Positions 15,971 through 60,231 of a stretch of 64,000 nucleotides of DNA are shown here, piece by piece. Origin of the DNA: Ylistrum balloti (taxonomy: Eukaryota). Every line of letters starts with the position of its first letter. The stretch's first letter is position 1. The notes under the pieces are model-generated. The model was not told the DNA's origin. It searched no databases and was given only the letters and a program-made list of their open reading frames with translations. The stretch is taken from positions 124,001 through 188,000 of the forward strand of contig NW_026782467.1 of NCBI RefSeq assembly GCF_031769215.1. The letters run 5' to 3'. Both the position numbers and the translations under genes were made by a program.

Positions 15971-16129
15971 ATTTGAGATGGTACTTGAAAAATGTCATAC
16001 TACTTCTGACAGTTTTTTTATAAGTGTCGTCATCTAAACCAACTTGTTATAGTCTTGGTCGAGTGTTAACTAGACCTATTTGTGACAGCGTTTGACAAGT
16101 ACCCTCTGTGACAGAAGTAGTTGGCTGGG

Positions 16130-16668: not shown

Positions 16669-16771
16669 GTCTGGTTCTATTTGTGGCAAACACAATTAGT
16701 TATTAAAGTTCCGAAGACTAACCGGTTTTATACCGCGATATAATTTATTAAAATGTGTAGTTGACTTTGAC

Positions 16772-29829: not shown

Positions 29830-31610
29830 ATCACGCTCACAACGGACAACGGTATTGAGAAATAAAATCTAATTTAGCACTAAAGAATAACATTACATTT
29901 CTGTTAATGTTGACCGCTACAACAATTATAAATATATAATACGTGTTATATGTATGTACACAATATACAGGAGACAAACATGAGTAGGTAATAAATAAGT
30001 AATTAATTCCGTAAAATACGTCACGTTTTGTAAATTTGAATACGTTTTCAAGGAGAAATAATATTTGGACAATGAGTGACTGATCAAACATTATTTGTTT
30101 GTCGTCTAAATTGCTACTTGACAATGGGAAATCTTCCTACGGGACAATGGAACAGCAGAAAATGTATCGAATCTCCTTACCGAACAATGGAGCAGCGCTT
30201 AATGTATCACCTTCCAGAACGGTGAAATGTCAAGTTGTATGTAGAAACGCACGAGTGCAAATAAACGATTTAAAGGGTCATTGTGACAAATTACCCGTAC
30301 AACACAGGTCGATGTTTTGATTACAATCGACACTTCTTTGACAATCAGTTCTGTATCTCGGACATAGCTCATTGACATCGTCATGTGAAATAAACAAAAT
30401 CTCTATGGTATTCGGACCTCTCGAATATAAAAATAATCTCTGAAGTATTTCGATTTCTGTACAATAAACAAGATGCCTTAAGAATTCTGATCTCTGTTAA
30501 ATGAAATGAACAAAAGCACTCTACCATTGTGATCTCTGTAAAAAATTCCATCTACAGATTTGTGTTTAGAAAATGGTTAGGAGATTCTTGTTATAAAATA
30601 GATAAAGGAAAAACGATATTGTCATTTACAGGATATCTTAATATTATGATAGAGGACCACATATTAAGTCCATGAATCAAATGACAAGTCTCTCTTTCAC
30701 CAACACAAGTACTTATTATCCAAAATATATTCCACTTTGGGAGTGTATTCCACTTTGGGAGGGGGGGGGGATGGTTGTCGATTGTGACAATTCTCCGTGA
30801 CGCGGGTTTCTCTTAATTATCCTGACATGATCTACACAACACTGTTACGACGCATTGTGACCATGGTCTTTGATCCCTGATTCAGACAATAACTAGAGTA
30901 TGTTCCGTACTAATAGCTTGGCTTTCTCCCAACCATTTTAGGTGTTTTACAACGAAGGACAGACGGACGGACGACACATCTAGCGAGTTACAGATACAGA
31001 GTACACACTTAATAGCTCTGATCTGATATCAACACCTCTAGCTAGTAATGTACCAGTAGTTCATTTATAACATGTATAAGGACGTCTGGACAGACGAGTA
31101 GCATGGTTACATAAAACCTACGGATCTTTACCAGGCGTTTGATAATCTTTATATATGTATAACAAATTTAGATAAAGCAACGTACACATTGTTAGACAAA
31201 GCATATGAAAAATATCAAAACAAAGAAATGTAATAATTTGTCTTTTACAGGTCAACAGCTCCATAAAATGTTGATTTCATGTTAAAACAATCCTTACATT
31301 TGACATTTACAAGCGTCCTGTTGACTCCGTTATATATAGCTTGTTTTTATGTTGATTACAAGTGCTATATGAAAAAGTGTTAAACATTTATTTTTAACTC
31401 ATTGAAATATCCAGTCGCTTTGAAATATAATACCTGCGTGTCACGTTTCATTCGGATAGCTTCACGCACGCACACATGGACTTAAAGTTCTTTTGAAATC
31501 ATTCTTTACTGAAAGTTATGAACTTTATTGAACGCCATAAGCGTTTTGATATTTATTTTGATCGAATTTTGTCTTCAGCCCTTGCAAAGTTTCAAACGAT
31601 GGTCCTTAGA

Positions 31611-31785
31611 ATCACTGACGAGACCTAGAAGGACGAAACGGCTGTATAATGTATCATCACTGACGAGAACTTGAAGGTCGAAACGGCTGTATGATGTATC
31701 ATCACTGACGAGATCTAGAAGAACGAAACGCCTGTATGATGTAGCATCACAGACGAGAACTAGAAGGACGAAACGGTTGTATAAT
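31611..31785 (+). ncRNA. Tandem array of four 45-nt minimal type-I hammerhead ribozyme motifs
   Basis: Each unit reads CATCA-CTGACGA-GnnC-T(A/T)GAA-G(G/A)nC-GAAA-C-GGCT-like loop-G-TA|TGATG-TA(T/G). Cores at 31615, 31660, 31705 and 31750 (the last is CAGACGA, mutated). Predicted GUA cleavage after 31646, 31691, 31736 and 31781. Confidence 0.85.
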
Positions 31786-34700
31786 ATTGTAAGATTTGCC
31801 ATTTGGCTCTATGGTTTCTAATTCTAATTTGTATCAAGAGATGTCTTTTGTTCAAGCTTTAAGTGTAACGGTTTTTTATCATATAAGTATTACAATGCAG
31901 GTCCCCATATGGTGACGTGGATGGCTGATGACTGGTTGAGTTGCTGGTTGGTTGACTCTGTCGACTTGGTTGGTTGACAGGATTTTCGTCTCTGCGACTC
32001 CTCCTGTGTCTGGGTATCGTCTCACCGACGGACGGATTGTTTATATAAACGGACGGGTGTAAACAGGGACATTGCAAGTGAAAAAAAGCAAGGGAAATAT
32101 CAAGATCCAAAGTGTTGCAATGAGGACAGCGCCTTTATCTAGATATCTTCAATGTCCTCTTGGTAGATAAACCATCCGATTCTCCAAGTGGATCACTTTT
32201 AATAATGAGGCAGTAGAATGCAACGTCCCTATTCTCTTCGGTGGCTCCTAAATAGAAGACATCAGAGAAGTTCTGTCCGTCCTGCTGACTTGTCCCATAA
32301 GTATTGCCTCTCCCGACATGTAGTAAATATACAGTAATGATAAGATTACATCTGATCTTGGTCAATAATCGGTAAAGTCCTATTACTTTTATCTCATTCC
32401 ACATCTGTTTAAATCATGGTACAACTTAACCTTGTGTTCTTGTCTTTACCCATTGCACAATGCTGTTTTCATCTGTATATATGTAGATAGCGATTTAAGT
32501 AAACTACTTCAGCGTGTAATATGCTGTTCAATTCTATAATATGTTACATTATGACCCATGAAATATGTTCCATATTTACTTTCATGTATAATATCTTACA
32601 GAACTATTTTTCTATAAGGTGTTTAGTATTCTGAGCTCAATTTGTTTATTTGAATTTTAAGCGTGCAGTTATGTACATTATTGTACTTCTGTGCCATTAT
32701 ATGACATAAACAATCTGTTTTTGTTTAGGACTAACGACTGCCGCCCTATGTTATCATTTGCGTAAGTGTGTTATAACTTACACAGACCCGTAAAATTATA
32801 CCAACAAGTACCATCACAAAACTACTTGAACGTACAGCGCAGCCGTCGACCTTCCATATCTGAGTCTAGTATTCAGATATACTCAACTGCTACTGGCAAA
32901 TCGGATCTGAATAAAGGCTAAGAAAATGATGCGTTTTTATGTATTGAAAACGACTGTGCAGACAACACGAGGCATTAACTTCTAGATTGTAGGTTTTTCT
33001 ATAACTCTTATTTCCATATGATTACGAATAAAATTTTGTTGCGAGACTATGGAAATGCATGGACAAGGAATGGAAAGAAATGTACAAGTGTATAAAAAGG
33101 AAAAAAACAGCGATAGATTCGACAGACCTGTCATTTTTTCATGCTGCCTTATGCATGGACAACAAAGATGAAGATATCTATATTTTTAATGTAAATCAAA
33201 GACACAATCATTGGCATTGGTAATAATTTAATAAAACGAGAAAACTGGCATGAAATCATCCCGCTTTCTTATAGAGTAACACTGTGAATTTGTTATTACA
33301 TAAACGATGAAAAATACACAATTCAATTAATGAAGCGTGGTTTTGCTTGCATGGCTGATTGATGTAGGTTGGAAGACTTAGTTCTCACGAAGTTCTATGA
33401 CGAGGGAACAGATATTCCTCACACCAAAAGATCAAAGAATAATGCCGAACTTTGATTTCTTTTTCGCGTTCATGAATGACCAGTCCTCCTTCTATCACAC
33501 CACCAATATATTCTCTACGTTCTTTCTCCTATCCTCCTAAGTCGTTGTTGTTTACTAGATACTTCTCGCAACATCAACCACAGCAGCTAGTTATAAAGAA
33601 TATTGGCAAGTAAACATATCTGTGAACCTCAGGATCCCAATCAATAACAGAATCATCTCATGTAGATCAAACGTTCAGATGAATCTTGAACCCACCTGTG
33701 TATTAACAGGCATCAACGTTATTTGTTTGTAATTTGTCTTCCCATTAACTGATAGCGTGCTACAGAGACGTAGAGATGTACATAAGATGACAAGAATCAA
33801 CACCACTCTGATCAAATGTTAAGAATTCATCAGGTTAGATCTAGTTGTTATGTAATATTGTTAGACTGGTCAGATCAACATTACAGCAAAATATATAAAA
33901 CATTGCCGTACAGAGATTTATATAAAAGAGCCTCATATGACGGATTATATACCATTTCGCAATTCCTCGCTGTTGTGTTTACCGTCGGTTGCCACTAGCT
34001 ACGAAATTCGACCTATGAGAGGTCACTCTCCTATCATGGTGGATAGAAAGATTATTCAAAACGTCACAAATGTCACGAATTTTCTTCCGTAATACAGACG
34101 AAGAAGCCTACTTAATACCCTAAACTATTTTAATATGACATCAAGTGTGTGTTTTGATGTGCGAACTACTTCCGACACGAATGCTCTCAGTCGAAAACAC
34201 GTCTGATGGGTTGGTAGATATACATATGTATAGATATATAGATAGATTAGTTGTTTGCTTCAGCTCGGACGTCTATCAAGCGCTAGTTATAAATTAACTC
34301 AAAATTGCTTAATGTCTAATCCATAACCATACTGAGTAACATTTATTTAATTCTATTATTTACATTCATAAATCTTATATTCGTCCTTCAAATAGCCTTG
34401 AATAGCTTCCCAAAAAACCTGGGATAATTTAATAATCACTTCACAAAACTATTTTGTGAAATGCTAATCACAGTGTTAATTATCATAAACAGATCAAGGC
34501 CACAAGATTCAAAACTGTTTGTCCCTTGTCGAGACAAATCAAACAGAATATTGAAATAGTTCCTACAGGAAATAAACATTATTTCTGCGTAATTGACCAT
34601 CACGTAAGGGATTAAGTTTTGCTGTGGTAACTCACATGTAAACAACTGAAGCCAAATCTGACATCATGAGGCGGTCTTACGTAAATCTCTCGACGATGTT

Positions 34701-37604
34701 TGTTTACAAATTTAAACTAATCCCGTTATATTAAAGAAATATTGAGAAAATTATTACCAGCGATGTTTTGGAATACAATGTTGTCCTGATCTTCAGCGTA
34801 CATCTTCCAATAAGGTAAAGCTGACTTTGTATTACGTATGTGAAAAAAAAATATTGCGTGTATTTCAAGAATGAAGACGAAAACATTGTAAACATGTCTG
34901 GAATTTTCTAGAAAAGATATTGATGATTTAGGAACTATATCTAGAAGCTGATCAAGTTAAATACAGAACTATAATGATACAATGGATAAACACATAACAA
35001 ACAGGAGTCTTATAAAACATGGATATCTGATAAAGATAGAATATTATCGATAACTGTGAAGTTCTCTGGACGTTACAGATAAATACACGCTTCCATGGCG
35101 CCCAGTGAAATATCCGACACACTTTTAAGATAGCCATCATCTATTCGAGCGTGCCCTGATATTTGGATTTATCATTGATAATGCGAAGTAACAGAGATTT
35201 CCAATAAAGCTATCCCAAGATAATGATAAAAAAACTTAAGTAAAATATACAACACCACTGAAGAAATTCACCAGTAGATCTTTGTCAATGCTTAACTTTT
35301 AGGTTTTATTTAGAGTAAATGCTTTCTCGGATCACGTGAGTAGAGTAGAGCACAAAATGATCGTAGGACTTTCGAGTATTTAATATTGCTTATGTTATAA
35401 ATGACAAAGGTGCCAAAGACGCCGAGATTGAATCTATCTCATTCATATTCGTTCAATGTAGACAACGGGAGTCTTTCAGAGACGTGGAAGACACCCGTTC
35501 CTGATACAAATTGTCCGTCCTTAAAGTCACTGATCTCTGCGCAGTGATTGGTATTGTCACCTAGATCACCTCAAACATGTGCTAATTAGTGGAACACAAA
35601 AGTAATTTTAGATCACTAGCGGATTATTTCGAATAAAAGTATCATGACCCAAGATAAAGACAAAAGGATTGAACGAGGACTGAGTCGATAAATTTGGAGA
35701 ACGAACAATGTCATTGATCTGTGTGAAAGAGACGACGATAAAACTGTACGATTCAAATTCCAAAATGTCTTAAGGTAGATAAACATTGCGAATTGATTAC
35801 TAATTCAGACAGATCTGCATCTGTTATGAAAATGGAAGGGTTTTCACGAATCATTATGTTACTATGGTCAATAGGAAAGAAACAGTTATCGTGCTTTCTA
35901 CATTACAAGGTACGTTGTAAGAACTGAAAGAAACACGTCATACTTTGTCATCTAACTGATGATATCCATATAAGATACATTTGTTCAATATCAAATTGTT
36001 GAGAACGTCCTACACAAGATCGATCTCCCTTTATTTTAAACTAAGTATCTAATTGCTACATCCTTTGATTACTCCCGTGGCGTTTGTCGGACTCTTTATC
36101 CGTGATTGGCAACTGCGCTCGGTGTCAAGGATGAAACAAAGCTGGCCTACTATTGGAAGATGACACAGTTGACTGTAAACATTTCAGTGTAAGAATAAGG
36201 GCACCCACATAACAGTACTAAAGATACAATAAGAAAGGTCACGTATCGTGGCCAAGGGTCATATGTCGCCATTAGGACTAGACTATCGAAGAACGAAGAA
36301 CATGGAAAGAAAACAGGCGTCAAAACCCCAATCAACTGGCGACATTATCACTAACGGAACTATAAAAGTACACTTAACGATATAGTATCCATCAACCAGT
36401 TGTACATGTAGATGTATAAAAACGTGTAACTGCATGTAATTTTTATGAATACGATCAACTGTAGAAACAAAATCCATATATTTTTGAAGCACCTGCTTTA
36501 GTTCTCGATTTTACTCCACTGGCAAACTTCTCTCATTTTTAGAATAGACATCCCTATGTAATAGGAGACTACAGCTGAGAGAAAATACTCATAGCTACAG
36601 AGCTCCTTCTTCATATTGTTGCGATAAAAAAAGATCTACAGTCTACCATGCTCTAGTATTGCTTCTTGATATACAGTTTTTTCTGTAGGTTATATCCCCA
36701 TAGCATATTTACATATACTCACTCTACCCACAGTCAGATCACAAGAGCTGTTTTACCCGCTTTAACTTTTCATCCCAAAATTTTTAAAACTTTTTCAGGA
36801 GTCTCCGTGTAAATCTTTCTTTTGTTCATATTTTGTTTTATGAATTTGAGTTTGAATAATGTTGTCATGTTAATATTTTCTTGATGTTTTTTTAATGACG
36901 TCGTAAAGCGGTGCCATGAAGATATTTGCTATAAGACCCGCTAACTTGAATTTTAGAATTACTAGGATTATTGATAAGCGACATACTGAGCGTGACGGAA
37001 AAACCGCTTCCGGAACTTCGTGGTTTATTCTTTCGTACACAATGCATTTATTGTTTTCTCGGTGTCTCCTCTGCTCTTATTGAAATGTTATCCTGGTTTT
37101 TGATGCCATGATATTAAATGCATTCTTTCTGCTCCGTGTTTAGAAATATTTTCGGACATAGCTTGTCTCCGCCGAGTATCCTTTCTGAAAAAGATTAGGC
37201 ATGATGTATCCCATATTATGACGAAAAACTGTACCAGTGACATATGTCTAACCAAACCATCAAGAGTTGGTGCACACTAAATTTTATAAATGATACAAGT
37301 AAACTGTGCTGTGTAATGCAAATTTAGAATTATATACGGAAGACCCCGATGAGAACTTAATTTGCATCATACAGCTATTTTGACTTTCTAGAATGCTGTG
37401 GGCCTAAATTGTTGAAACATAAGTTGGTCGAAAAAGACGGTCGAAATCCATGCTAAGAACCATCCGGTAAGGTGTGCTAGCTTCAGAATTCAATAAATAC
37501 ATACATTTGTATGTCAGAGATCTGCTTTCAAATGAACTAACGCTTGTGTTTATACTGAACAAACACATATTTCATACGAAGGAGACAACCTTGACGACAA
37601 CAAA

Positions 37605-37649
<45 letters not shown>

Positions 37650-37725
37650 ATGGCGACGGCGGCGATGGTGTGGTGGTGGCTGTGGTGTAGAGATGATGAT
37701 GATAATGATGATGATGATGATGATG
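37605..37725. repeat. Compound (GAT)n microsatellite
   Basis: (GAT)15 at 37605-37649, a GGC/GGT-rich spacer, then a second GAT run to 37725. Confidence 0.95.
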
Positions 37726-38643
37726 CCATTGAGAAACTGAGTATGACGATAGCTGTCATACTGTTTCAGCATAACAGCATCCTCTTTACAAGTCTATCAG
37801 AGTGTAGGGAATTTGAAAGATATCCGATAACTATCATAGGTTTACAGTGTATCAAATACAGTACACTGATGCGAAAATAACGCTACTAGAGTGCTTTCAT
37901 TATATGTATCAAATGTTACCAAAGCTTCCATCATTAACCACCATTTAATTAACAGAGGAAGAATACAGCCTGCAATGTTTCTGTGGACTGCCTTTGACCA
38001 GGCTCTAATCCCTGGAGTGTTGGCCTAATGTGCGATAGTTATTATAAAGCTATACTTCACTGCCCACCAATCCTCCTCAGGATGTACGATGTTCACGAAT
38101 GGAAGTTACTGATTATAACTAAGCATCGATATGTCGTTACGGACTGGGAACGTATCTGTGTTAACGAAGCAATCTAAACGACTAAAGGTGCTCTAAGCTT
38201 CGTGTGATTATATCTTAAATGTCTTGTTTACAAACAATGAGTACACTCAACTTTTATAAGTAACGGACACATCATAAGAATATCTACACACCATGTTTTA
38301 TTTATGCATTAAAAAAGTGTTCGCGATTGCTTTTAAAATGAAACCTAACTAAGCTGTGACTGACCTAAATAACCTTAAGATATAAAAAGAAGCACTACTA
38401 CACTAAATGACCCTGGGTTATGAAAGATCGAGATCAATAACTGATAAATGAGGATGGAGCAGTCGGAGTGACACTCTAGTCATATAGGCAGTGAAGAGTG
38501 TAGGGGATTTAATATCAGTCATAGTAATGACACGCGTAAGTTTCAAATTAACAAAGTATGCGCCACCCAATTTTGTTGTTTAACTAGGCATTCCTTATTA
38601 GTGTTGTTAGGGTCTGTTGATATCAACTCAACACTTTGTGCCC

Positions 38644-39027
38644 GCTGCTGTGGCAACGTCACAGGGTCAAACGCTGCTGTGGTAACGTTTCAGTGCCAAA
38701 CGCTGTTGTGGCAACGTCTCAGGGTCAAACGCTGCTGTGTTGACGTCTCAGGGCAAACGCTGCTTTGGTAACGTCTCAGGATCAAACGCTGCTGTGTTGA
38801 CGTCTCAGGGTCAAACGTCTCAGGGTCAAACGTTGCTGTGTTTGCATATCTGGGTCAAAAGCTGTTGTGGTAACGTCTCAGGGTCAAATGCTGCTGTGAT
38901 AACGTCTCAGGGTCAAACGCTGCTGTGTTGACGTCTCAGGGCCAACGCTGCTGTGGTAACGTCTCAGGGTCAAACGCTGCTGTGGTAACGTCTCATGGTC
39001 AAAAGCTGCTGTGGTAACGTCATAGGG
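38644..39027. repeat. 29-bp minisatellite, about 13 copies
   Basis: Unit gctgctgtggtaacgtctcagggtcaaac; anchors at 38644 and 38673. Confidence 0.95.
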
Positions 39028-40235: not shown

Positions 40236-40390
40236 GTCATAAAACGCCGAACCAAAGTGACATCTTTTGTCGGGATATTTCGCTACGTCATAAAACGCCG
40301 AACCAATTTGACATATTTTGTCGGGACATTTTGCTACGTCATAAAACGCCGAACCAATGTGACATGTTTTGTCGGGACATTTCGCTACAC
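40236..40390. repeat. 51-bp tandem repeat, 3 copies
   Basis: Unit gtcataaaacgccgaaccaaagtgacatcttttgtcgggatatttcgctac; 17-aa periodicity in ORF 40163-40459. Confidence 0.93.
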
Positions 40391-41902
40391 CATATGACGT
40401 TGAAACCTACATTAACTTCTACACCAAGTGATTCACTAAACGTTGTCATTTTGAAATAACAGACGAGTCGAAAAAATCCTATTTATCTCAAAGCAGTTAA
40501 TACAGAAACAACCCTACCTTACCTTACCTTGAAATGAACAGACTAGTAAAGTGCTATATTTAGATTCATTTGACAGACAGTAGGATACTCAATATAGAAA
40601 TGCTTTTGGCTGTTGCTAAACAACAAACCGATCTAAAAACACTTGAGAGGAGAGTTGTGACGAGCCCTAATGTAGAGCATATTTGACTTAGGGCGTAACC
40701 ATGCGTCTAATTCACTTTTAAGAAACGTTACGTGTTCTTCACGGGACTTTTTTGTATTCAAGAGAAGATTACCCTTTATGTTTTGACGGTAATAAGATCA
40801 AACTGATCCTATTGTTAGGAATGAAAGGGCCATTTTGAATGGCTTTATTTCACACATCTATAGACAAAGCGTGTAAACTGATGGATATTGATCTATATTT
40901 GTGTTAGTATCAAATAAATAAAGCCTTATAATCGCTCTCAGTTCGTGAATATCGACACGGCGGCTTTTAAATTACGCCACCCAAATCACGCGGGCAATTT
41001 AGGGGCAAATATCGGTCCATTTTCAGTCATCTCCAATGTTTATTTAGATAAACCGAGCAAAATTACTTCCGTAATATTGTTATGTTGTGTAATAGAAATG
41101 GACCATTTCATCTTTTTGTAAGGAATGAGGTTGAGAAAAATGTGCATGTGATATATATGAAGAATGTGCCTTTTAATGTTTATCAATAAAACATTCCAAG
41201 AGATGTTCTTGCTCTGAATCAAAAGTAAAATTAGTTAGTTGAAGTTGCATATTGCAACCCCACCCTTCTCTTGGCCACAAGGTGGAGCTGCAGGCATCCT
41301 ACGCTGTACTTCCTTCTGTGTTACACGTGCTGACGCGAATGATGTCAGATATTATCTATGAACTTGTTTTGACATTTATTAAGCCAGTGTTATAAGTGTG
41401 ATCTGAGATTGGCAGAGAGGATACAAACATTCTTCATATATCTTTATAGAAAATCATGACTATCAGTCTTCAATCTTGAAGGTTTAGTAACACTTTTACT
41501 TGTTTTGTGTGATATCACCACACAGACACGACCCGCGTAAGAACATTCCTTACATAAGTAAATTTGTAGATACATGTGCACTTCCTGATGTGTGCTACAA
41601 TTTATTACTGATCCTCGTAACCACATTTATTTATGATTTACTAATTATATCTTTTAAAACGTGTTATTTTTCATAATAAAAAAAACAGATAGGGTGGAGA
41701 GTAATACCGGATATCTATTCTAATCCATCTTGAAACACATTTGAACAATTGACAGAATGCGGAAACGTGCAAACCTCTTGCTAAGTAAATAAACAGCAGT
41801 TATGGGTTGTTCAAATGCAAAGGATATCTTTGTAAAGATCTGTCTTCTGTGTAAAACGCCTGTAAATTGTTCAAAAAGACACAAACATGATTAGCATTTT
41901 CC

Positions 41903-42006
41903 GATACAAATTAAGAGTTAGATACAGTAGAGCCAAACAAAAACAAAAAATCAAAGTCGTTTCGTCCTTCTAGAGCATAAATTTCAAAATCTGGCGACTG
42001 AGGAAA
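41903..42006 (-). ncRNA. Truncated member of the hammerhead-containing repeat family
   Basis: The minus strand reads ctagaaggacgaaacgact...gtttggctctactgtatctaactcttaatttgtatc: the 3' half of the ribozyme plus the shared 3' flank. The CTGAnGA core is missing. Confidence 0.7.
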
Positions 42007-42857
42007 ATTCAAAGTTATAAAAAATGATAAAATCTTGTTGAGAGATGGTATCGCCCATATTTCAATAACTGCTGTAGTTTTCATGTATCTGATAATTTAA
42101 AAACAAATATTTCAAGTACATGTGTAGATTCGAAAACAAGCCACTATCCGAATAAATTAAAACTTAGAATGCAGGTTTTATAAAAATACTCGAATACAAT
42201 ACATTGTACTACGCGCTACTTTCCAGCAATCAACGGTATCAAATCATCCCGCTTTTTCACTTGTTGATGTTGAATATTTTTCCTAAAAAAGTACAAGAAA
42301 CAGAATTCGATGTAGTGATACACTAATACAATTCGTGATACACTGAAGCATCATTTCACTGATAACTCGCCGGTAACGACTCTCCAGTGACACGTTTATC
42401 TAGAGTTTTACAGAATTCTATGTGAATTTGCGGCATTTAAGTGCTTGCCTGTACAATATATGTGGTCTTTCTGCAGGAGTATATGTAACGGTCCCAATCA
42501 ACACTGAAATCGACTACATAGTATTGCCAATGAAAGCTATTTCAGTTTTCATCGTAGACAGAAACCATTGAAACAATGTCTATTTTTCTAATTTAATTTT
42601 CTGATTTAAATGTTTAAGAAGTTCTCTAAAGCAGATTCTCTATAATGTAAATAAAAGAATCTACAAAATAAAGGAAATTGGTTTATAAATGATATCAAAT
42701 ATCAATTTATTTGTTCATTGGTAAATATATTCTTAAAAGATTATTAAGATTATCATTTGACCTTTTTAGAACATATCTGATTTAATGGGCTGTTAAAGCT
42801 ATCGTCTAATTTTGTAACATTGTTGTGTGAATATACTATTAATACTTTCGTCTGTCT

Positions 42858-43570
42858 TTTTATGACATTATCGTTCGGTTGGTCGTTAGATTTTATGTCT
42901 ATCGTTTGTCTTTATGTCTATCGTTGTCTTTATGTCTATCGTTTGTCTTTATGTCTATCGTTGTCTTTATGTCTATCGTTTGTCTTTATGTCTATCGTTT
43001 GTCTTTATGTCTATCGTTGTCTTTATGTCTATCGTTTGCCTTTATGTCTATCGTTGTCTTTTTATGACATTATCGTTCGGTTGGTCGTTAGATTTTATGT
43101 CTATCGCTTGTCATTATGTCTATCGTTTGTCTTTATGTCTATTATTGTCTTTATGTCTATCGTGTGTCTTTATGTCTATCGTTGTCTTTATGTCTATCGT
43201 TTGTCTTTATGTCTATCGTTGTCTTTATGTCTATCGTTTGTCTTTATGTCTATCGTTGTCTTTATGTCTATCGTTGTCTTTATGTCTATCGTTTTTCTTT
43301 ATGTCTATCGTTTGTCTTTATGTCTATCGTTTTTCTTTATGTCTATCGTTGTCTTTATGGCTATCGTTTGTCTTTATGTCTATCGTTGTCTTTATGTCTA
43401 TCGTTGTCTTTATGTCTATCGTTGTCTTTATGTCTATCGTTTGTCTTTATGGCTATCGTTGTCTTTATGTCTATCGTTTGTCTTTATGTCTATCGATTGT
43501 TTTTTTTATGACATTATCGTTCGGTCTGTATTTAAACCTATTGATCGACTCTTTATAGCATTATCGTTCG
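42858..43570. repeat. 18/19-bp minisatellite with an interspersed longer cassette
   Basis: Unit gtctttatgtctatcgtt(t). The cassette atgacattatcgttcgg(ttggtcgttagat) occurs at 42862, 43064 and ~43509. Confidence 0.95.
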
Positions 43571-47700: not shown

Positions 47701-47830
47701 ATATATATGTACTTGACGTTGTTCTAAAATTATCTGATATATGAAAATTGCAAAGTTTATCTAATTTTTTGGGCAAGTGCATCTCTCTGTCTAGATGTTG
47801 ACTCCTAGGTTTCAAAATTTTGGACCCTTA

Positions 47831-47919
47831 GCGTCACTGACGAGTACTAAAAGGACGAAACAGCTGTATGATGTAGCATCACTGATGAGTACTAAAAGGA
47901 CGAAACAGCTGTATGATGC
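47831..47919 (+). ncRNA. Tandem dimer of 45-nt minimal type-I hammerhead ribozymes (best-preserved copies)
   Basis: GCGTCA-CTGACGA-GTAC-TAAAA-GGAC-GAAA-CAGCTG-TA|TGATG-TA-GCATCA-CTGATGA-GTAC-TAAAA-GGAC-GAAA-CAGCTG-TA|TGATGC. Both cores are intact. Stem I of the second unit is a perfect 6 bp (GCATCA/TGATGC); stem II has one A-G mismatch. Predicted cleavage after 47868 and 47913. Confidence 0.88.
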
Positions 47920-48608
47920 ATTTTTCTTGTTTTCGTCTACTGTATGTAACTATAAATTTGTATTAAAAGGTGTTATTCACTTGTGTCTTTTGTACAATGC
48001 TCTATTGCTAACAGAGAATATCCTGGATATCCTCTAAACTCTGTGATATAAAAAGACAATGGATTGCTCATTTACATATATTAAAACAAGTCATATCCAA
48101 ACATTGACAGAAATTATCTGTGTTCTGTGACTGAATTTTTCTATTTTGTTATGTTACATCCCTTATCGCCAAGCTAAACATCGATCTACCGCCTCGTCAT
48201 TTAGAATCCATATCTTTATTAATCATAATCACAGCTTCTGTACTTTGTATCTTCAACGAGCCAATTAAATTCAGAGCATTGCCCTACAGAATTGTAAAGA
48301 TTATAAGATACCCATAACTAATAAAATCAGTTTTACGGAGATAACTTACTGATTTTAGGCAACAGCCATTCTTTCTCACCAATATGGAGAAGGTAATCAC
48401 TGTAAACGACAGTTAATGTCCATGTTTGGTGTTAAAGACGTTTCCTTTCCATAAACAGTGGTAAAGTTACTATGTCTTTGTTTCAGATATCTCTTGTCAT
48501 AGGGACTGACATTTTTTCTTCCAATTTTCGTATCCTCCTCCCCGCGGCCTCTGTATCCCCCTCCCCGCAGCATCTCTCCGCCTCTCCTAAGTTTCAAAAT
48601 TCAGCATA

Positions 48609-48652
48609 GCATCACTGACGAGTTTTATAAGGACGAAACAGATGCATGATGC
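48609..48652 (+). ncRNA. Single minimal hammerhead motif, probably inactive
   Basis: GCATCA-CTGACGA-GTTT-TATAA-GGAC-GAAA-CAGATG-CA-TGATGC. Stem I is perfect, but the cleavage triplet is GCA instead of GUA. It shares the family flanks (48584-48710). Confidence 0.78.
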
Positions 48653-49496
48653 AATTTAAAATAATTCATAATTTGGCTCCACTGCATCTTAATCTAATTT
48701 TGTATCAAAAGTGCGATTCACTTGTTTAATTCTTCCTTCAGTTTTAACTAGCCTATGTGTAGGTAAATGAATGTTTTACTGGATACAATAACGCCTATAG
48801 TAGAACTGTGTCTGAAGATATCAGAGCATGACTACTAAACTCATGGATGGTTCGTATGTACAACCTCAAGGTATGTACAACAGCACTTAACAAAGAAAAC
48901 ACGTGAATCAGGAATAAAGGTTTTATAATGGCTTAAAATTTGTGGTGTTATTGACTTATATAAATGCACATAAAATACACTTTTACATTACATTTATATA
49001 TATAAGTGAACAGCTACATGAAGAAAAGAACAGTGTAGATTTATCGAAAGTATAGACATTGATAAAGCGAACAGTATATAGAGAGGCAGCTAGAAATAGA
49101 AAGACGAATTATACCTGTACGGTCACCAAAAAACAGATGCCCACCAGCACCACTAACCCACATTCCGTCAGACGGGACAGAAAATGGTGGTCAGTGTGAA
49201 GATGGCAAACGTGATCTCTCTGTGGCTTTTCGAAAAAGAGCAGGCGCGATAACGTCAGCCCAGAGATTAGAGCTAGGTTAGGAATGTGGATTATTTATTC
49301 AATTATTTTGACGGACTTAATAAATATCATCAACATGTCAGAATTTATCTAGTTTAGAATCATCTTCCTCTTCCTCCCTGTCCATAACCAATCATCTTGC
49401 TGCGACGTGTTCAGTGTTAGATTTGGTCTACAATTAGGGCAGGGTGTTGCCTTCTAAATTATAGTTTAAGAACAGGTCAAGAAGCATAGACGGCCC

Positions 49497-51268
49497 CTCT
49501 CTACCTCTTCTCTGTATCCCACTCTCTACCTCTTCTCTGTATCCCACTCTCTACCTCCTCTCTGTATTCGACTCTCTACCGCCTCTCTGTATCCCGCTCT
49601 TTACCTCCTCTCTGTATCCCACTCTTTACCTCTTCTCTGTATCCCACTCTCTACCTCCTCTCTGTATTCGACTCTCTACCGCCTCTCTGTATCCCACTCT
49701 TTACCTCTTCTCTGTATCCCACTCTCTACCTCCTCTCTGTATTCGACTCTCTACCGCCTCTCTGTATCCCGCTCTTTACCTCCTCTCTGTATCCCACTCT
49801 CTACCTCCTCTATGCTACCCACTCTCTACCTCCTCTCTGTATCCCACTCTCTACCTCTTCTGTGTATCCCACTCTCTACCTCCTCTCTGTATCCCACTCT
49901 CTGCATCCTCTCTGTATTCCACTCTCTGCCTCTTCTCTGTATCCCACTCTCTACCTCTTCTCTGTATCCCACTCTCTACCTCCTCTCTGTATCCCACTCT
50001 CTACCTCCTCACTGTATCCCACTCTCTGCCTCCTCTCTGTATCCCACTCTCTACCTCCTCTCTGTATCCCACTCTCTGCATCCTCTCTGTATTCCACTCT
50101 CTGCCTCCTCTATGTATCCCACTCTCTGCATCCTCTCAGTATCCCACTCTCTACCTCCTCTCTGTATCCCACTCTCTACCTCCTCTCTGTATCCCACTCT
50201 CTGCCTCCTCTCTGTATCCCACTCTCTGCATCCTCTCTGTATTCCACTCTCTGCCTCTTCTCTGTATCCCGCTCTTTACCTCCTCTCTGTATCCCACTCT
50301 CTACCTCCTCTCTGTATCCCACTCTCTGCATCCTCTCTGTATTCCACTCTCTGCCTCTTCTCTGTATCCCACTCTCTACCTCTTCTCTGTATCCCACTCT
50401 CTACCTCCTCTCTGTATCCCACTCTTTACCTCCTCTGTATCCCACTCTCTACCTCCTCTCTGTATCCCACTCTCTACCTCCTCTCTGTATCCCACTCTCT
50501 GCCTCCTCTCTGTATCCCACTCTCTACCTCCTCTCTGTATCCCACTCTCTGCCTCCTCACTGTATCCCACTCTCTACCTCCTCTCTGTATCCCACTCTCT
50601 ACCTCCTCTCTGTATCCCACTCTCTGCCTCCTCTCTGTATCCCACTCTCTACCTCCTCTCTGTATCCCACTCTCTACCTCCTCTCTGTATCCCACTCTCT
50701 ACCTCCTCTCTGTATCCCACTCTTTACCTCCTCTCTGTATCCCACTCTCTACCTCCTCTCTGTATCCCACTCTCTACCTCCTCTCTGTATCCCACTCTCT
50801 GCCTCTTCTCTGTATCCCACTCTCTACCTCCTCTCTGTATCCCACTCTCTACCTCCTCTCTGTATCCCACTCTCTACCTCCTCTCTGTATCCCACTCTCT
50901 ACCTCCTCACTGTATCCCACTCTCTACCTCCTCTCTGTATCCCACTCTCTACCTCCTCTCTGTATCCCACTCTCTGCCTCCTCTCTGTATCCCACTCTCT
51001 ACCTCCTCTCTGTATCCCACTCTCTGCCTCCTCTCTGTATCCCACTCTCTACCTCCTCTCTGTATCCCACTCTCTGCCTCTTCTCTGTATCCCACTCTCT
51101 ACCTCCTCTCTGTATCCCACTCTCTACCTCCTCTCTGTATCCCACTCTCTACCTCCTCTCTGTATCCCACTCTCTACCTCCTCTCTGTATCCCACTCTCT
51201 GCCTCCTCACTGTATCCCACTCTCTACCTCCTTTCTGTATCCCACTCTCTACCTCTTCTCTGTATCCT
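49497..51268. repeat. 25-bp pyrimidine-rich minisatellite, about 71 copies
   Basis: Unit ctctctacctcctctctgtatccca. The 25-aa repeat in ORFs 49812-51341 equals 3 units. Confidence 0.97.
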
Positions 51269-52640
51269 AATCTCTGCCAGTGCTTCCTATATTTCCCTTC
51301 TGCTCATTTTTCTATCCTTCTCCTCCACTGAATGGCCGTAATAGTATACGAAAAAACCCGTTTAGTAGATAAATAACATGTTATATAAAACAGCTGACAA
51401 TAAATACTTATAAGGTGAATCTGTAATGATGCTGTACATTTATATTGCAGTATTTAATGTCGCAGTCATGGATTTAATCTTGAATTCGTAAATTTACAAC
51501 TGAGTGACTACAAAAATAAAACGAGCGCGTTGTTGTATGATTGGAGTACAGTGTGCTGAGTGTATGAACCGCTGTGTAATGTATATACCAGTACATGTAA
51601 CACATCATAACGTCACGTATACCCACGCCAAAGTATACAAGGAACGTCAATGTTGTCAAATAAGAATTTGACGTTTTACGGCAGCTTACTGCGAACGCCC
51701 TAGACTTAAATGTCAGCACAAACAACGGTCCTTGTGTGTAAATTTACAGAGTACAAAACAAAAACTCAAAAAATAAAAACACGATCCATGCTGCTATCAC
51801 ATTTGAAAAGTGTTAGTATGTTTCTTCGAAACAATAAAAAAGTCCCGCGTGCGCACGCGATCGCCTTTGGCTAGACAGCTATGTTCATTCTATTGCAGTA
51901 TACATGATACATATGATACATATGGAGCAGGTGTAATGCGATTCCGGTGGAAAGATAATTCTGTCCTGTTTAATCTAATGCCCATGACATGCATGGTAAA
52001 GTCAAAAACATTCGCATGGTAGTTTGCACGTGTGCCGTACAATGACTCTATGGACAATGGACCAATAGATACTAGCCCCTTATTTGGGCAAAAGAACACT
52101 CTAATGATAAACATTGGTCAATAACCAACTACCAGTAACCAAGGACGATAAACTAGGCCATAAAATATCCGAAACGCTGTGTCCTCACGGCTACGAAATA
52201 TTTGAAGGGTGTATCAAAAGTCGTTCCTGATTCACATTTACGTTGCTCCTGGGCTCATTTATTGTATTGGTTTATTTTGGTTGATAAACTTTTTCTTGTT
52301 TGCATTTAATTTACATAAATGTCTTAAAGGACCGGAATCCGAATAGAATTAACAAGAAAATAAAGGACCTTAATTTGGCAGCCTTTATTCTGTTCTAATC
52401 TGTAGCAGTTATTGCTGCGAAAATTACGTAAACTAGAACAAAACTGTTTTAACACGTTACTGAAATTGTCAAAACTTTTCTCCAAGACATATTGTACATA
52501 CCTTGATGTTCGATTCTATTGGAGAATTACAGACCTGATTTGGTATCCCAAACATGGACTGTACAAAACGTACACAAATGAATAGCGCCTTCCAATACAA
52601 ACTTAGTTAGATACAGTATAGCATAAACGTGAATTAAATT

Positions 52641-52681
52641 GCATTATATAGCCGTTTCGTCCTTCTAGGACTCAGTGATGC
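52641..52681 (-). ncRNA. Minimal hammerhead motif with a 3-nt core deletion
   Basis: Minus strand GCATCA-CTGA-(nGA deleted)-GTCC-TAGAA-GGAC-GAAA-CGGCTA-TA-TAATGC. Stem II is perfect, and the shared 3' flank ctgtatctaactaagtttgtatt is present. Confidence 0.75.
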
Positions 52682-54758
52682 CTAAATCTCGATGCTTATG
52701 AGGCGACTGAAGAAAAGCAAAGTGACGAATGAAACGTCAACATATTTACGGGGAGATGCACTACCCCATGATTCAGGAAATTTCGTTATTTTCATATATC
52801 AGATGATTTTAAAACATCGTCATGTACATGTGTAAGGGCAACGTAGAGACTGAACGCCTGTATAGAGATCAAGATAACATGATGGCAGGTATAATATTTG
52901 AGTTGTATCTTATTGTATTTGGTGTACGTCTGTTACATGGCATTACAATTATCTTGGACAATCACAGACAAACCCTCCATAGCACTGTCGGAATAGACTT
53001 TTAGATTACATTACTGCTATGTTTCACACTGTTGCCTCTCTGATTTAAATTTTGTTTGCTTTCCATGTTGTAACTAATTTACAAATGTCAAGAAAGAAAT
53101 TGTTTCAAATTTAACACGAGGTTAGCTCTTCACCATTGCATGTTGTTTCCAATCCCGTCACTGCAGAGCGTCTGATCCCTCCAACATACAGGTTAATCTT
53201 TGACTTAAAGATGCTCCACGGTTTGATCTACACAGTTTAGCCTCTGGTGTTTAAATGTGTCAGATTCTATAATGTTGGATATTTTCACAGCATTAGTATT
53301 ATCTCTAATAAAGGAACCAGCGTAACTACTTCTCCGGAATTTCGAATACTTGACGCTTGCGCTATTCGATAAACATGTGCAAACGCCGGATCAATGTCAA
53401 CAGTTCCCCGCTGGAAATCGGAGAGATTCCAGGTTTTATTTAACGTTGGCATGGTGTTAAGATAGATTCCAAATTGCATTTTCTCCAAAACTAATCATTT
53501 CTACTAATTGAATTGTCTGCTTTCTGTGTATTTCGCCCTATGGAAAGCAATACATGTCGAAAAGAAGATTACTCTAGTGTAAACAGCTCTAAACTTCCAA
53601 TGGACAATCTGATCGTATACAATGTAATTCGGAATAAATCATATATTGCAACATATTTACTGTTTCGGTATACGCACACGATAAATGGATATAAGTTACT
53701 CACCAAATTGTTTAAAGTTTCATTCCCTTTATACAATGAAAACGTTTACAGAAATTTTAAGAAATACCAATTTATCGTGTTTCGGTAAGCAAATACTATG
53801 ATTTATTTAACATTTTTGTTTTATACTCAGTTTTATTGAGCTTTCATGAATCAATATACAGTGACGTATTTAGATCTAACTTTCTTGTAATATGCGATGC
53901 TCGGAGGGAATACAGAGACCAATCATTTTCAATCGATTACATTAAAATAAATAAACAAGGACCGAATGTTAGCCTTACTTTAGTATTGCTGTATTTACCG
54001 GAACCGGAAGTCGACTTGACTTTACCTAAAAATGATACGTAGACAGTATATCGTCTCCTGGATAAAACTCATAGACGTCATTGCCAAACGTTACCAAGTG
54101 ATGCCAGAATATGGATCTATTTTTAATCCGATGTACACTAGTGTCAACCTGTTGGCACTGAGCACCCGTCTGTTTCCCCAAACAACTGTAAATAGAACGC
54201 CGGGATCAGCATCCACATATTGCCACACGTGTCGTTACAAGACAGCTGCCAACACGCTTAGTAGTGCATATAATTAAATCTTTATCACTTCGTTTCTCTA
54301 AACACAAACATGGAGAACAACATAATGAAAAAATATCAGTCTTGAATCTGGATTGCTGTGAAGTGGGTGTAAATGTGTTGAAATTCGATGGTAATGGAAT
54401 TTCTAATAATATCATCCATTATTTTCGTGAAATATACTCTTCAAAATAGGCTCATCCAGATGGTTACTTGTGTTTCGTCCGAATCTCTTTCTTTGTATTA
54501 TTTTGATATTTGTTGTAAACATATCTTACTGAAATAATTAAAATTTATTGTTATTAAATTGAATAAGTAAAATCCTTGTATTATATTCAGAACGACGTTT
54601 TACAGCAGTAATCTATATAAATAATATATAATAAATAACTCACGTGACAAGAAATCAGAGAAATTCATCAAAGCAAATCTCTCAATCCTTAAATCGACAT
54701 CCATTGATGACATGCATGAATTTAGCTGGTGTATGTACTGGTATAACGTGTAAGCGAT

Positions 54759-55595
54759 TACGTTTGTCTAATGTGTTTAGTGGTATAAAGTGCTGATGTG
54801 TCGATCATACGAACCTCCGTGTACGTTTGTCTAATGTGTTTAGTGGTATAAAGTGCTGATGTGTCGATCATACGAACCTCCGTGTACGTTTGTCTAATGT
54901 GCTTAGTGGTATAAAGTGCTGATGTGTCGATCATACGAACCTCCGTGTACGTTTGTCTAATGTGTTTAGTGGTATAAAGTGTTGATGTGTCGATAACACG
55001 AACCTCCGTGTACGTTTGTCTAATGTGCTTAGTGGTATAAAGTGCTGATGTGTCGATCATACGAACCTCCGTGTACGTTTGTCTAATGTGTTTAGTCGTA
55101 TAACGTGTCGATGTGTCAATGATACAAGACTGTACGTTTGTCTAATGTGTTTAGTAGTATAAAGTGTCGAGGTGTCAATGATACAAGACTGTACGTTTGT
55201 CTAATGTGTTTAGTGGTATAAAGTGTCGAGTTGTCAATGATACAAGACTGTACGTTTGTCTAATGTGTTTAGTGGTATAAAGTGTCGAGGTGTCAATGAT
55301 ACAAGACTGTTCGTTTGTCTAATGTGTTTAGTGGTATAAAGTGTCGAGGTGTCAATGATACAAGACTACGTTTGTCTAATGTGTTAACTGGTATAAAGTG
55401 TCGAGGTGTCAATGATGCAAGACTGTATGTTTGTCTAATGTGTTTAGTAGTATAAAGTGTCGAGGTGTCAATGATACAAGACTGTACGTTTGTCTAATGT
55501 GTTTAGTAGTATAAAGTGTCGAGGTATCAAGGATACGAGCTTCTCTGGTATAAAGTGCTGAGGTGTCGATAATGCGAGTCCCTGTGTATGTTTGA
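54759..55595. repeat. Minisatellite switching from 63-bp units (5 copies) to 59-bp units (about 8 copies)
   Basis: Anchor tacgtttgtctaatgtg at 54759, 54822, 54885, 54948, 55011, 55074, then 55133, 55192, 55251 and onward. Confidence 0.95.
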
Positions 55596-58500: not shown

Positions 58501-59580
58501 GTAATTATATGCTGTACACCGTTCTTTAAACTTTAAAAAAAAAAAGAAAAAAGAAAGAAAAAGATAGTCCTCTTGTTTTATTTGTTAACGAAACTGTCGT
58601 TGACGGAACATGCTTTCATGATCAACAGCAGTGAGACTTTATCAAGAGTACCGATGTTTTCTAAAATTATCAAATAGCGCCATTCCCTTATGAGGTTAAA
58701 AGTAATTGGAAACAAAAAACGTGAAGTCAACGCGAAAGTCGTCCGATTCCGAACGGATATCTTGTCCACAGCGAGGGAGTCTCCGAAATAATTTATATTG
58801 AAATAAGGGCTTCGGGGGAAAATCCGGGTATGGAATCTTCTTTTTATGTCTACCATATTTCTTAGAGTATGTTCATCTTAACGCTCACAGCACTCCCAAT
58901 TCCCATTACATCGTGCCATTTAAACAAACCGATCATTTATCAAGTAGGACTGTTTTTTTCTACAAGCAACGAAGCCTTGCCCGAGACTTTGAAATACTGC
59001 CAAACAACATATCAATTTAGAACAAATTAGAAACATAAATATTGTCGGAAAAATAAAGACTTTCATTTTTAAAGTGATTTGAAGACAAGGCCATTTTAGG
59101 AACCCGTTTACTGAGATTTATCTGGGATGTTTTGTAATCACGACGATTTAGGCTGACAGTTGAAGGGATTAGTAGTTGAAATGGCGTGTGGGTTTATGTG
59201 TGTTTGTAGTTTAAAAGGGAGAGAATGTTTTAAAGTTTAGGCGTTAATATCGTCACGCTTATGTACTGAAGGTATATCGTTATATATAAGGATTCGCTTA
59301 CGATTTAACGAATCTATTCATTGTTATTTAAGTGTTACACCTATAAAATCAATTAGATTTCGTGAAATATATGTAAGCACCGATAAATGAATAGAATGAA
59401 TCACTTACTTTATTTCGCGGACTAACCTCTTCTCTAATCCAGAACTAACTTTAAATTTGTGAATGATGACCTATTAAATCCTATTAGATGCCTGTATTTT
59501 ACAGACTTCAATATCGTCGGTAACCGATTGAACATGGAAGCCATGGATGTCATCCAGAGTTATTTTCGTACAAACAATCG

Positions 59581-59611
59581 CCCCCCCCCCCCCCCCCCAC
59601 ACACACACACC
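59581..59611. repeat. Poly(C) run followed by (CA)n
   Basis: About 18 C followed by acacacacacacac. Confidence 0.9.
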
Positions 59612-60079
59612 TGTCCCCCACCTTTCTTTGATGACCTTATATTTCTGTATTCTTTTTCATCTTTCCCAACTATAAGTAAAGCGCAGTAATAACAGCTGTA
59701 AAATGAATAACTTTAGGATAATCCTTTCTTCAATATGTTTTCGACGCTCGGCTACTCTATACATATTCTTATATGTACTTCCGTTGTAATGGGATTTTAA
59801 TTTGTATAGGAAGGCTTTTATTAACCTTTGTGTGTTTTGTACCATCTTCGAGATGGCAGATGGTACACACTGCTTATGGACTTTTAAGTCCCAGAGGTTT
59901 GTCTTTACCTACATACGATGTTTTAAACGTTAGAATAGTGATACGGTTCAGAGCATACACATGTATGTTCTTTTCAGATAATTCAATATTGAACGTAACG
60001 AGTTTGATTGAATATTAAGGTTAGTACACCTTCCCATCTCGGATTGGACATGTATAGGTTTTGTTATTTAGGACCTTAC

Positions 60080-60122
60080 CATCACTGACAAGTCCTACAA
60101 AGACGAAACAGCTGCATGATGC
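60080..60122 (+). ncRNA. Minimal hammerhead motif inside a ~119-bp direct-repeat unit, probably inactive
   Basis: CATCA-CTGACAA-GTCC-TACAA-AGAC-GAAA-CAGCTG-CA-TGATG, with core G8>A and a GCA triplet. The upstream ggacat..ggttt.gttatttaggacctta.catcactgac is repeated at 60046 and 60165. Confidence 0.75.
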
Positions 60123-60231
60123 AGATTGTTTGGCTCTATTGTACGATCTAATACATGAGAGATAGGACATTTACAGGTTTCGTTATTTAGGACCTTAACA
60201 TCACTGACTTACACAGAGATTCGTGAAAATG

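What the first reader, a model, noticed from the sequence alone, without database searches (positions are those of the whole stretch)
31588..60212. Dispersed retrozyme-like family: six hammerhead loci on both strands with shared flanks
Seen: loci at 31588-31840 (+), 41903-42006 (-), 47802-47970 (+), 48584-48710 (+), 52594-52716 (-) and 60046-60212 (+). They share a 3' flank (tttggctct(a)ctgtatctaa..t.taatttgtat, partial at 60.1 kb). Several also share 5' pieces (gtttcaaa...gg(a/t)ccttag; tcagtcgcc). About ten ribozyme motifs in 64 kb imply a high genomic copy number. No ORF, TIR, poly(A) tail or clear TSD is visible. Inference: a short (~120-170 nt) non-autonomous retroelement, likely mobilised by a Penelope-like or other RT in trans. 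Reconstructed ancestor: GCATCA-CTGAYGA-GTCC-TAGAA-GGAC-GAAA-C(A/G)GCTG-TA-TGATGC.
Basis: partly seen in the sequence, partly recalled or inferred. Interest (0 to 1): 0.75.

Follow-up and report, generated by a model that had tools for sequence, protein, structure and literature searches.

The report
Decayed hammerhead retrozyme family, ~400-nt unit

Summary
All six loci are copies of one dispersed family with shared flanks and hammerhead (HHR) motifs. A seventh copy lies at 37282-37560(-).

Its unit is about 400 nt: linker (~112), arm (~155), a 45-nt type-I HHR (1 to 35 copies) and an 84-nt tail.

Across 76 copies, the 3' end is fixed at ...TTGTACAATC(TT). The 5' ends are ragged and often run through the tail-to-linker junction into a second, partial unit. 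There is no ORF, poly(A) or TSD. This is the footprint of reverse transcription from a fixed internal site on a template longer than one unit. It matches non-LTR retrozymes and Penelope-like (PLE) mobilisation.

Intact RT+GIY-YIG PLEs exist in this genome. Their sampled 3' regions carry a different, minimal HHR and share nothing with this family, so the family is not simply their pLTR.

The family looks old and inactive:
- Tails differ pairwise by about 27%.
- About half of the units keep the catalytic core.
- There is no covariation.
- No window copy reaches Rfam thresholds, although intact arrays elsewhere do.

The 45-nt arrays look like DNA-level minisatellite growth. Earlier notes of this scan already reported such arrays elsewhere in this genome. 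Expression could not be tested.

The parts
31431..31833 (+). Family copy, 5'-truncated (unit HMM 64-367): arm, four 45-nt HHR units (31609-31788) and a decayed tail
   Evidence: nhmmer with the unit HMM. TRF finds period 45, 3.9 copies. Three of the four units keep the core, but all have stem II mismatches.
37282..37560 (-).
   Evidence: nhmmer E=5e-12; sequence read.
41867..42177 (-). Family copy (unit HMM 64-402): linker end, arm, half an HHR (CTGANGA part lost) and tail
   Evidence: nhmmer E=9e-34.
47701..47998 (+). Family copy (unit HMM 114-403): arm, two HHR units (47831-47920, all core bases present, one A.G mismatch in helix II) and a complete tail ending in TTGTACAAT
   Evidence: Rfam Hammerhead_1 scores 24.6 and 20.9 bits, below the gathering score of 34. 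The centroid fold shows the 8-bp inter-unit helix III, but the z-score is -0.23.
48581..48727 (+). Short 5'-truncated copy (unit HMM 247-389): end of arm, one HHR (48609-48653; GTA changed to GCA, weak helix II) and tail
52557..52834 (-). Family copy (unit HMM 115-404): arm, one HHR with 3 nt deleted from the CTGANGA box, and a complete tail
   Evidence: nhmmer E=8.5e-49.
59690..60143 (+). Copy longer than one unit: remnant of an upstream HHR end and tail (about 59690-59846), tail-to-linker junction at about 59846/7, linker, arm, one HHR (60079-60123, core broken: CTGACAAG) and a truncated tail
   Evidence: nhmmer places 59844-60143 on HMM 3-350. The upstream tail and junction were read.
60144..60212 (+). 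Local partial duplication of the arm end and the start of the HHR from the preceding copy
   Evidence: Sequence read.

Best explanation
These loci are fossil insertions of a non-coding, non-autonomous retroelement of the animal 'non-LTR retrozyme' kind. One unit is about 400 nt: linker, arm, a canonical type-I hammerhead, then an 84-nt tail.

Shown here:
- The 3' end of copies is fixed at ...TTGTACAATC(TT).
- The 5' ends fall anywhere in the unit. In roughly a tenth of copies they lie beyond the tail-to-linker junction, inside a second upstream unit, with nothing between the units.
- There is no ORF, poly(A) or TSD.

Inferred:
- New copies were made by target-primed reverse transcription. It started at one internal site of a template longer than one unit (an uncleaved tandem transcript or a circularised monomer) and stopped early at random.
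- This is how Penelope-like elements behave (internal initiation, partial tandems), so a PLE RT-EN acting in trans is the likeliest driver.
- The hammerhead has a 6-bp helix I, a 4-bp helix II, and a 2-bp helix III capped by a palindromic loop. It would cut multimeric transcripts into unit lengths and needs a neighbouring copy to form a stable helix III.
- Where the 45-nt HHR is repeated head to tail, neighbours supply that helix and each boundary reads as a type-III hammerhead.
- These arrays (1-35 units) grew at the DNA level inside inserted copies, as many other minisatellites in this genome did.
- The family is old and now decaying neutrally.
For: Unit and junction: 25 or more copies show tail, linker, arm, HHR and tail contiguous.

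Ends: 48 of 76 uncut copies end at HMM positions 400-408, while 5' starts are spread over the whole unit. Among 29 copies picked by the junction alone, 17 end within 7 nt of the same position. Copies that appear to 'start at 1' in fact continue into an upstream tail.

No TSD. No RT or EN next to the copies. GC is 37-40%.

Hammerhead identity: the consensus has every core base and three helices, with 89.8% of pair cells canonical. Intact arrays pass Rfam thresholds: Hammerhead_3 50.5 bits (gathering score 48.5), read across the unit boundary, and Hammerhead_1 37.2 bits (gathering score 34).

DNA-level array growth: units within an array are more alike than units between arrays (4.2 against 5.6 differences). 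Core-killing variants fill whole arrays, for example G9A in 19 of 24 units and G12A in 23 of 35. The window holds about ten other 19-60-nt minisatellites.

PLE availability: 72 GIY-YIG hits, and a 755-aa RVT_1+GIY-YIG frame in at least 6 copies that are 99-100% identical.

Literature:
- Mussel retrozymes are 350-390 bp with type-I HHRs, and PLEs were proposed as their mobilisers (PMC7229834).
- A PLE RT initiates internally (PMC11167929).
- Retrozymes have been described as PLE derivatives (bioRxiv 10.64898/2026.07.22.740005).
Against: - No sequence link to any PLE was found. Eight sampled PLE clusters share nothing with the unit, and those with a recognisable hammerhead carry a different, minimal one. 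Only their 3' 1.5 kb could be read.
- There is no covariation, and only a weak excess of core conservation (6.4% mismatch against 7.5-10.5% in stems and loops).
- Circular folds of 11 units are no more stable than shuffles (mean z -0.4).
- The two units of one copy are not clearly more alike than random pairs (0.76 against 0.73), so origin in a single event is not proven.
- Copies of more than about 2 units were not seen, whereas typical retrozymes form longer tandems.
Confidence: 0.68

Rival explanations
1. The family is simply 5'-truncated debris and solo pLTRs of an autonomous Penelope-like element that I did not sample, not an independent non-autonomous element.
For: PLE insertions are usually heavily 5'-truncated and leave a single terminal repeat (bioRxiv 10.64898/2026.07.22.740005, discussion). 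The fixed 3' end and ragged 5' end fit that pattern.
Against: In every junction-spanning copy the tail is followed directly by the linker of the next unit, with no ORF between them. No RT or EN lies within 1.5 kb of 58 family loci. The eight PLE clusters sampled share no sequence with the unit beyond chance neighbours; three carry minimal hammerheads with a long helix II and the others show none.
Confidence: 0.1
2. It is a SINE-like element copied by a LINE-type (stringent, 3'-end-recognising) reverse transcriptase rather than by a PLE.
For: A fixed 3' end with 5' truncation is also the LINE/SINE signature. Earlier scan notes report other RT-bearing elements with hammerhead-like 3' ends in this genome (unverified).
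Against: There is no TSD and no poly(A) or microsatellite tail. Run-on into a second unit, and a hammerhead of the retrozyme type, are not LINE/SINE traits.
Confidence: 0.1
3. It is a DNA-level repeat. It could be a rolling-circle (Helentron-type) or MITE-like carrier of an internal tandem array, as described for bivalve 'satellite-carrying' elements. The hammerhead would be incidental cargo.
For: Conserved left and right flanks around a variable internal array, with no TSD, resemble the oyster Helentron-borne satellite repeats (PMC7492417). The arrays themselves did grow at the DNA level.
Against: Ragged 5' ends against one fixed 3' end, and read-through from tail into linker, are not expected of cut-and-paste or Helitron-type copies. 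No terminal inverted repeats or 3' hairpin/CTRR-type end were seen at the termini.
Confidence: 0.06

Closest known systems
Animal non-LTR retrozymes (Cervera & de la Pena 2020, PMC7229834), e.g. the 350-390-bp Mytilus galloprovincialis retrozyme
   Same: Non-coding unit of about 400 nt with low GC. Canonical type-I hammerhead with a short helix III and a palindromic loop. Units joined head to tail. Thousands of copies. Coexists with PLEs. Also found in a mollusc, if the earlier notes on this genome are right.
   Different: Most copies here are single, 5'-truncated fragments with one fixed 3' end, and none exceeds about 2 units. The HHR alone is expanded into spacer-free 45-nt arrays inside the unit. 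Expression and circRNA are untested, and the family looks extinct.
Penelope-like element pLTRs with minimal hammerheads (Cervera & de la Pena 2014, PMC4209133; Frangieh et al. 2024, PMC11167929)
   Same: Partial-tandem insertions, 5' truncation, a fixed internal start of reverse transcription, hard-to-find TSDs, and a hammerhead that works as a dimer.
   Different: No RT-EN ORF lies between the repeats. The hammerhead is the canonical type (6-bp helix I, 4-bp helix II), not the PLE minimal type with a 7-8-bp helix II that this genome's own PLEs carry.
Newt satellite 2, Schistosoma Sm-alpha and cave-cricket pDo500 hammerhead satellites
   Same: Tandem DNA repeats in which each unit encodes a type-I hammerhead that needs a neighbour (a double hammerhead) to cut.
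   Different: Those units are 330-500 bp with long spacers. Here the array unit is the 45-nt ribozyme itself, nested in a dispersed element.
Short retrozyme families in vertebrates (consensus lengths down to 51 bp; bioRxiv 10.64898/2026.07.22.740005)
   Same: Tandem units little longer than the ribozyme itself.
   Different: Those are reported as stand-alone tandem families in vertebrates. Here the short array sits between the conserved arm and tail of a 400-nt unit.

Membership tests
Hammerhead ribozyme (Rfam clan CL00010) | Conserved catalytic core (CUGANGA ... GAAA, A15.1-U16.1, cleavage after UH) | tested here: met
   Present in the family majority sequence and in 48% of 513 units. Five of the eight window units keep it.
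Hammerhead ribozyme (Rfam clan CL00010) | Three helices around the core | tested here: met
   Helix I has 6 bp, helix II 4 bp, and helix III 2 bp (8 bp between neighbouring units). 89.8% of pair cells are canonical, against 12-48% when partners are slid.
Hammerhead ribozyme (Rfam clan CL00010) | Score at or above the curated Rfam gathering threshold | tested here: inconclusive
   Window copies fail (best 27.5 bits against 34). Intact members elsewhere pass: Hammerhead_3 50.5 against 48.5, and Hammerhead_1 37.2 against 34.
Hammerhead ribozyme (Rfam clan CL00010) | Covariation supporting the helices | tested here: not met
   11 double compensatory changes against 11.0 +/- 3.0 in column shuffles. 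All copies descend from one recent ancestor, so the test has little power.
Hammerhead ribozyme (Rfam clan CL00010) | Self-cleavage | not testable with these tools
   Needs in vitro transcription of monomer, dimer and array constructs.
Non-LTR retrozyme | Non-coding unit of about 170-400 nt with a type-I HHR, low GC, and no LTR, PBS or PPT | tested here: met
   Unit is about 400 nt, GC 37-40%, with no ORF.
Non-LTR retrozyme | Head-to-tail tandem organisation (dimers to multimers) | tested here: inconclusive
   Units join directly, tail to linker, in 25 or more copies, but none exceeds about 2 units in +/-1.5 kb. About 540 junction matches stand against 2,474 tail matches.
Non-LTR retrozyme | Expressed as linear and circular unit-length RNA | not testable with these tools
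Non-LTR retrozyme | Coexistence with autonomous PLEs | tested here: met
   72 GIY-YIG hits, and a 755-aa RVT_1+GIY-YIG frame in at least 6 near-identical copies.
Penelope-like element pLTR | Repeat flanks an RT-(GIY-YIG) ORF | tested here: not met
   Tail is followed directly by linker. There is no RT or EN within 1.5 kb of 58 family loci. PLE loci hold only chance neighbours of the family, beyond the PLE's own 3' end.
Penelope-like element pLTR | PLE-type minimal hammerhead (long helix II, short helix I) | tested here: not met
   The family HHR has a 4-bp helix II and a 6-bp helix I. This genome's PLEs carry the minimal type.

The most novel reading that the evidence does not exclude
The spacer-free 45-nt arrays are not only DNA slippage products. 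Their transcripts would cut themselves into 45-nt ribozyme monomers that are ligated and copied (RT template jumping or rolling circle), making them the smallest retrozyme-like replicating unit known. The second hot spot of tandem growth, a 47-nt unit exactly at the reverse-transcription start junction, would then also be an RT footprint.
Probability: 0.05. Interest if true: 0.8.

Novelty: new member of a known kind. Interest (0 to 1): 0.38.

Why it matters
The family gives a clean genomic footprint for how animal retrozymes were copied. It shows one fixed internal start site, templates longer than a unit, ragged 5' ends and no TSD. That agrees with the internal initiation shown in vitro for a PLE, and with the recent proposal that retrozymes are PLE dependants.

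It also shows that a complete ribozyme can become the unit of an ordinary minisatellite, and that it goes on expanding after its catalytic core is dead. This is a caution against reading every hammerhead array as functional.

For annotation, about 10^4 copies and at least 19,000 ribozyme cores in a 648-Mb genome should be masked as one repeat family.

Tried and rejected
- Rfam at gathering thresholds found nothing in the window.
- The TSD search found no signal.
- The covariation test found none.
- Folding of the best window dimer (z -0.23) and circular folds of 11 units (mean z -0.4) gave no excess stability.
- Intra-copy against inter-copy tail identity, used to test for single-event origin, gave no clear difference.
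- An apparent cluster of 5' ends near the hammerhead cleavage site dissolved on inspection. It is part of a smooth decay of 5' ends with distance from the junction, and the ends are not at the cleavage site itself.
- Family fragments lying 3' of EN domains in L051, L054 and L055 looked like a PLE link. They lie beyond that PLE's own 3' end, at varying distances, so they are chance neighbours.
- Open frames in the family loci are repeat artefacts or host genes, not RT or EN.
Full-length PLEs, including ORF starts and 5' pLTRs, could therefore not be read.
- The organism was not identified by me. 'Scallop' and 'bivalve' come from earlier scan notes only.
Full report
OBSERVATION

The window contains hammerhead-like cores far above chance. 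The pattern CTGANGA N6-30 CGAAAC occurs 6 times against 0.12 expected. Rfam finds nothing at its curated thresholds. At permissive thresholds it reports Hammerhead_1 at 31609-31697, 47876-47919 and 47831-47874 with 27.5, 24.6 and 20.9 bits, against a gathering score of 34.

ANATOMY OF THE FAMILY

The genome is 648.5 Mb in 1,372 contigs. A DNA search of it with the 47.8-kb copy gave 3,763 first-look candidates. From 58 fetched family loci I defined a unit of about 400 nt:
- a linker of about 112 nt,
- an arm of about 155 nt,
- a 45-nt hammerhead, present 1 to 35 times head to tail without spacer,
- an 84-nt tail ending ...TTGTACAATC(TT).

A profile HMM of 11 single-hammerhead units was used only for annotation. 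The copy at 59.7-60.1 kb is longer than one unit. It begins in the remains of an upstream hammerhead and tail, and crosses the tail-to-linker junction at about 59846.

ENDS OF THE COPIES

Of 76 copies not cut by a locus end, 48 end at HMM positions 400-408. The 5' starts are spread over the whole unit. Among 29 copies chosen only because they contain the junction, 17 end within 7 nt of the same position.

Copies that seem to start at unit position 1 in fact continue upstream into a partial tail. A search with the junction itself returned mostly hits covering the tail end and linker as one piece. The unit therefore has a defined 3' end but no defined 5' end, and templates longer than one unit were copied.

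Pattern counts give a rough measure. There are 2,474 tail-motif matches and 540 junction matches, the latter inflated by junction arrays, with zero for the reversed controls. Roughly a tenth of copies cross the junction.

There is no poly(A). There is no TSD: the longest shared string between 5' and 3' flanks averages 5.28 nt, against 5.37 nt for mismatched pairs. Open frames near the copies are array artefacts or host genes, not RT or EN.

THE RIBOZYME

It has every core base, a 6-bp helix I, a 4-bp helix II, and a 2-bp helix III capped by a palindromic loop. This is the canonical metazoan type-I design, which needs a second copy to build a stable helix III (PMC4209133).

In arrays the neighbour supplies that helix. 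Rfam's type-III model reads across the unit boundary and scores up to 50.5 bits (gathering score 48.5). The type-I model scores up to 37.2 bits (gathering score 34). The family is therefore a hammerhead by curated criteria, although no window copy is.

Only 48% of the units keep the core. In the window, five of eight full-length units keep it, and all of those have helix II mismatches or weak helices. Three further loci have internal deletions in the ribozyme.

SELECTION AND AGE

Within the family there is no covariation. There are 11 compensatory double changes against 11.0 +/- 3.0 in shuffles, and 89.8% of cells are paired against 89.7%.

Core positions are only slightly better kept than the rest. 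Core mismatch is 6.4%, against 7.5-10.5% for stems and loops, and the worst core positions are CpG sites.

Tails of different copies are about 73% identical. The best non-self matches reach 85-90% identity. Exact tail motifs are about as rare as uniform old age predicts.

Circular folds of 11 units are no more stable than dinucleotide shuffles (mean z -0.4). The same holds for the best window dimer (z -0.23), although its centroid does show the 8-bp inter-unit helix III and the helix I hairpin.

The family is an old burst now decaying neutrally.

THE 45-NT ARRAYS

Units within an array differ less than units from different arrays (4.2 against 5.6 differences; adjacent units 3.7). Array-wide private variants include core-killing ones: G9A in 19 of 24 units of one array, G12A in 23 of 35 of another, and A10C and T8C in others. 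Arrays therefore kept growing from dead units, which argues for DNA-level expansion and against growth through self-cleaved RNA.

The window alone holds about ten unrelated minisatellites with 19-60-nt periods, so this genome makes such arrays readily.

The tail/linker junction has also become a 47-nt minisatellite at several loci. I note this without an explanation.

WHO MOVED IT

A fixed internal start, ragged 5' ends, partial tandems and hard-to-find TSDs are the signature of Penelope-like elements. Internal initiation has been shown in vitro for one PLE (PMC11167929).

The genome has 72 GIY-YIG hits. [quoted passage not shown]

I found no sequence link to the family. Eight PLE clusters were sampled over 1.5 kb on each side of the EN domain. 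Three carry Penelope-type minimal hammerheads with a long helix II; the others show none. None shares anything with the unit, apart from family fragments that lie beyond the PLE's own 3' end at varying distances.

PLE mobilisation is therefore an inference from anatomy and from the literature (PMC7229834; bioRxiv 10.64898/2026.07.22.740005). It is not a demonstrated link.

COMPARISON AND VERDICT

The closest known things are the animal non-LTR retrozymes, in particular the 350-390-bp mussel family (PMC7229834). This family matches them in unit size, composition, ribozyme type, lack of coding capacity, head-to-tail joining and coexistence with PLEs.

It differs in three ways. It is mostly dispersed as truncated single units. 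It carries secondary arrays made of the ribozyme alone. It is apparently extinct.

Very short retrozyme units (51 bp) have been reported in vertebrates (bioRxiv 10.64898/2026.07.22.740005). Earlier follow-ups of this same scan had already noted 45-nt hammerhead arrays elsewhere in this genome, and reached the same DNA-expansion reading. I checked that reading independently here.

I file the finding as a new member of a known kind.

LIMITS

- The organism was not identified by me.
- I built no full-length consensus or ancestral unit (see referred steps).

Noticed in passing
L074:1632-1951; L086:1279-1504; pattern hits at 47-nt spacing at G000 C212:31450-31803, C233:1197216-1198468, C1002:52510-53615, C52:1307182-1307769, C246:415617-417847: A second minisatellite born from the same family. 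A 47-nt unit spanning the tail-end/linker-start junction, which is the inferred start site of reverse transcription, is expanded into tandem arrays at several loci.
   Followed up: partly
window 2765-5149, 9298-10295, 11054-11388, 16134-16669, 20437-20900, 38643-39021, 42892-43504, 49497-51275, 54759-55536, 62331-64000: The window is packed with unrelated minisatellites of 19-60-nt (and 114/456-nt) period. The 42-nt array at 2765-4904 is followed by an inverted arm at 4914-5149. Several arrays create long spurious ORFs.
   Followed up: no
window 18199-19314 (-): Single-exon 371-aa ORF of a rhodopsin-family GPCR (7tm_1, E=4.6e-61). The ORF at 16092-16706(+) matches Galaxin-like repeats and coincides with a 39-nt tandem array.
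   Followed up: partly
G000 C422:240415-261997 and C129:48748-51996, 66035-69283 (L036, L037, L042-L045, L059): Canonical EN+ Penelope-like element with an open 755-aa frame (RVT_1 plus C-terminal GIY-YIG) in at least 6 copies that are 99-100% identical. At C422 the copies form a head-to-tail array with a 5.36-kb period. It looks potentially active.
   Followed up: partly
L038, L040, L041, L046, L047, L049, L053, L058 (about 0.8-1 kb 3' of the EN domain): Three PLE clusters carry Penelope-type minimal hammerheads (long helix II, short helix I, CCGG/CTAG-type palindromic helix III). These are clearly different from the hammerhead of the family studied here.
   Followed up: partly
L034, L048, L050-L052, L055-L057 (oriented positions about 1220-1970): A young (96-98% identical), heavily 5'-truncated PLE-like family. 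Its copies end about 210 nt after the GIY-YIG domain, next to (TA)n microsatellites, which suggests a (TA)n target preference.
   Followed up: no
G000 C19:1174706-1175810: Exact hammerhead cores recur every 180 nt (4 units) over about 1.1 kb. This indicates a higher-order repeat inside one 45-nt array.
   Followed up: no
window 60144-60212: Local partial duplication of the arm end and the start of the hammerhead, directly after the truncated copy at 60.1 kb.
   Followed up: no
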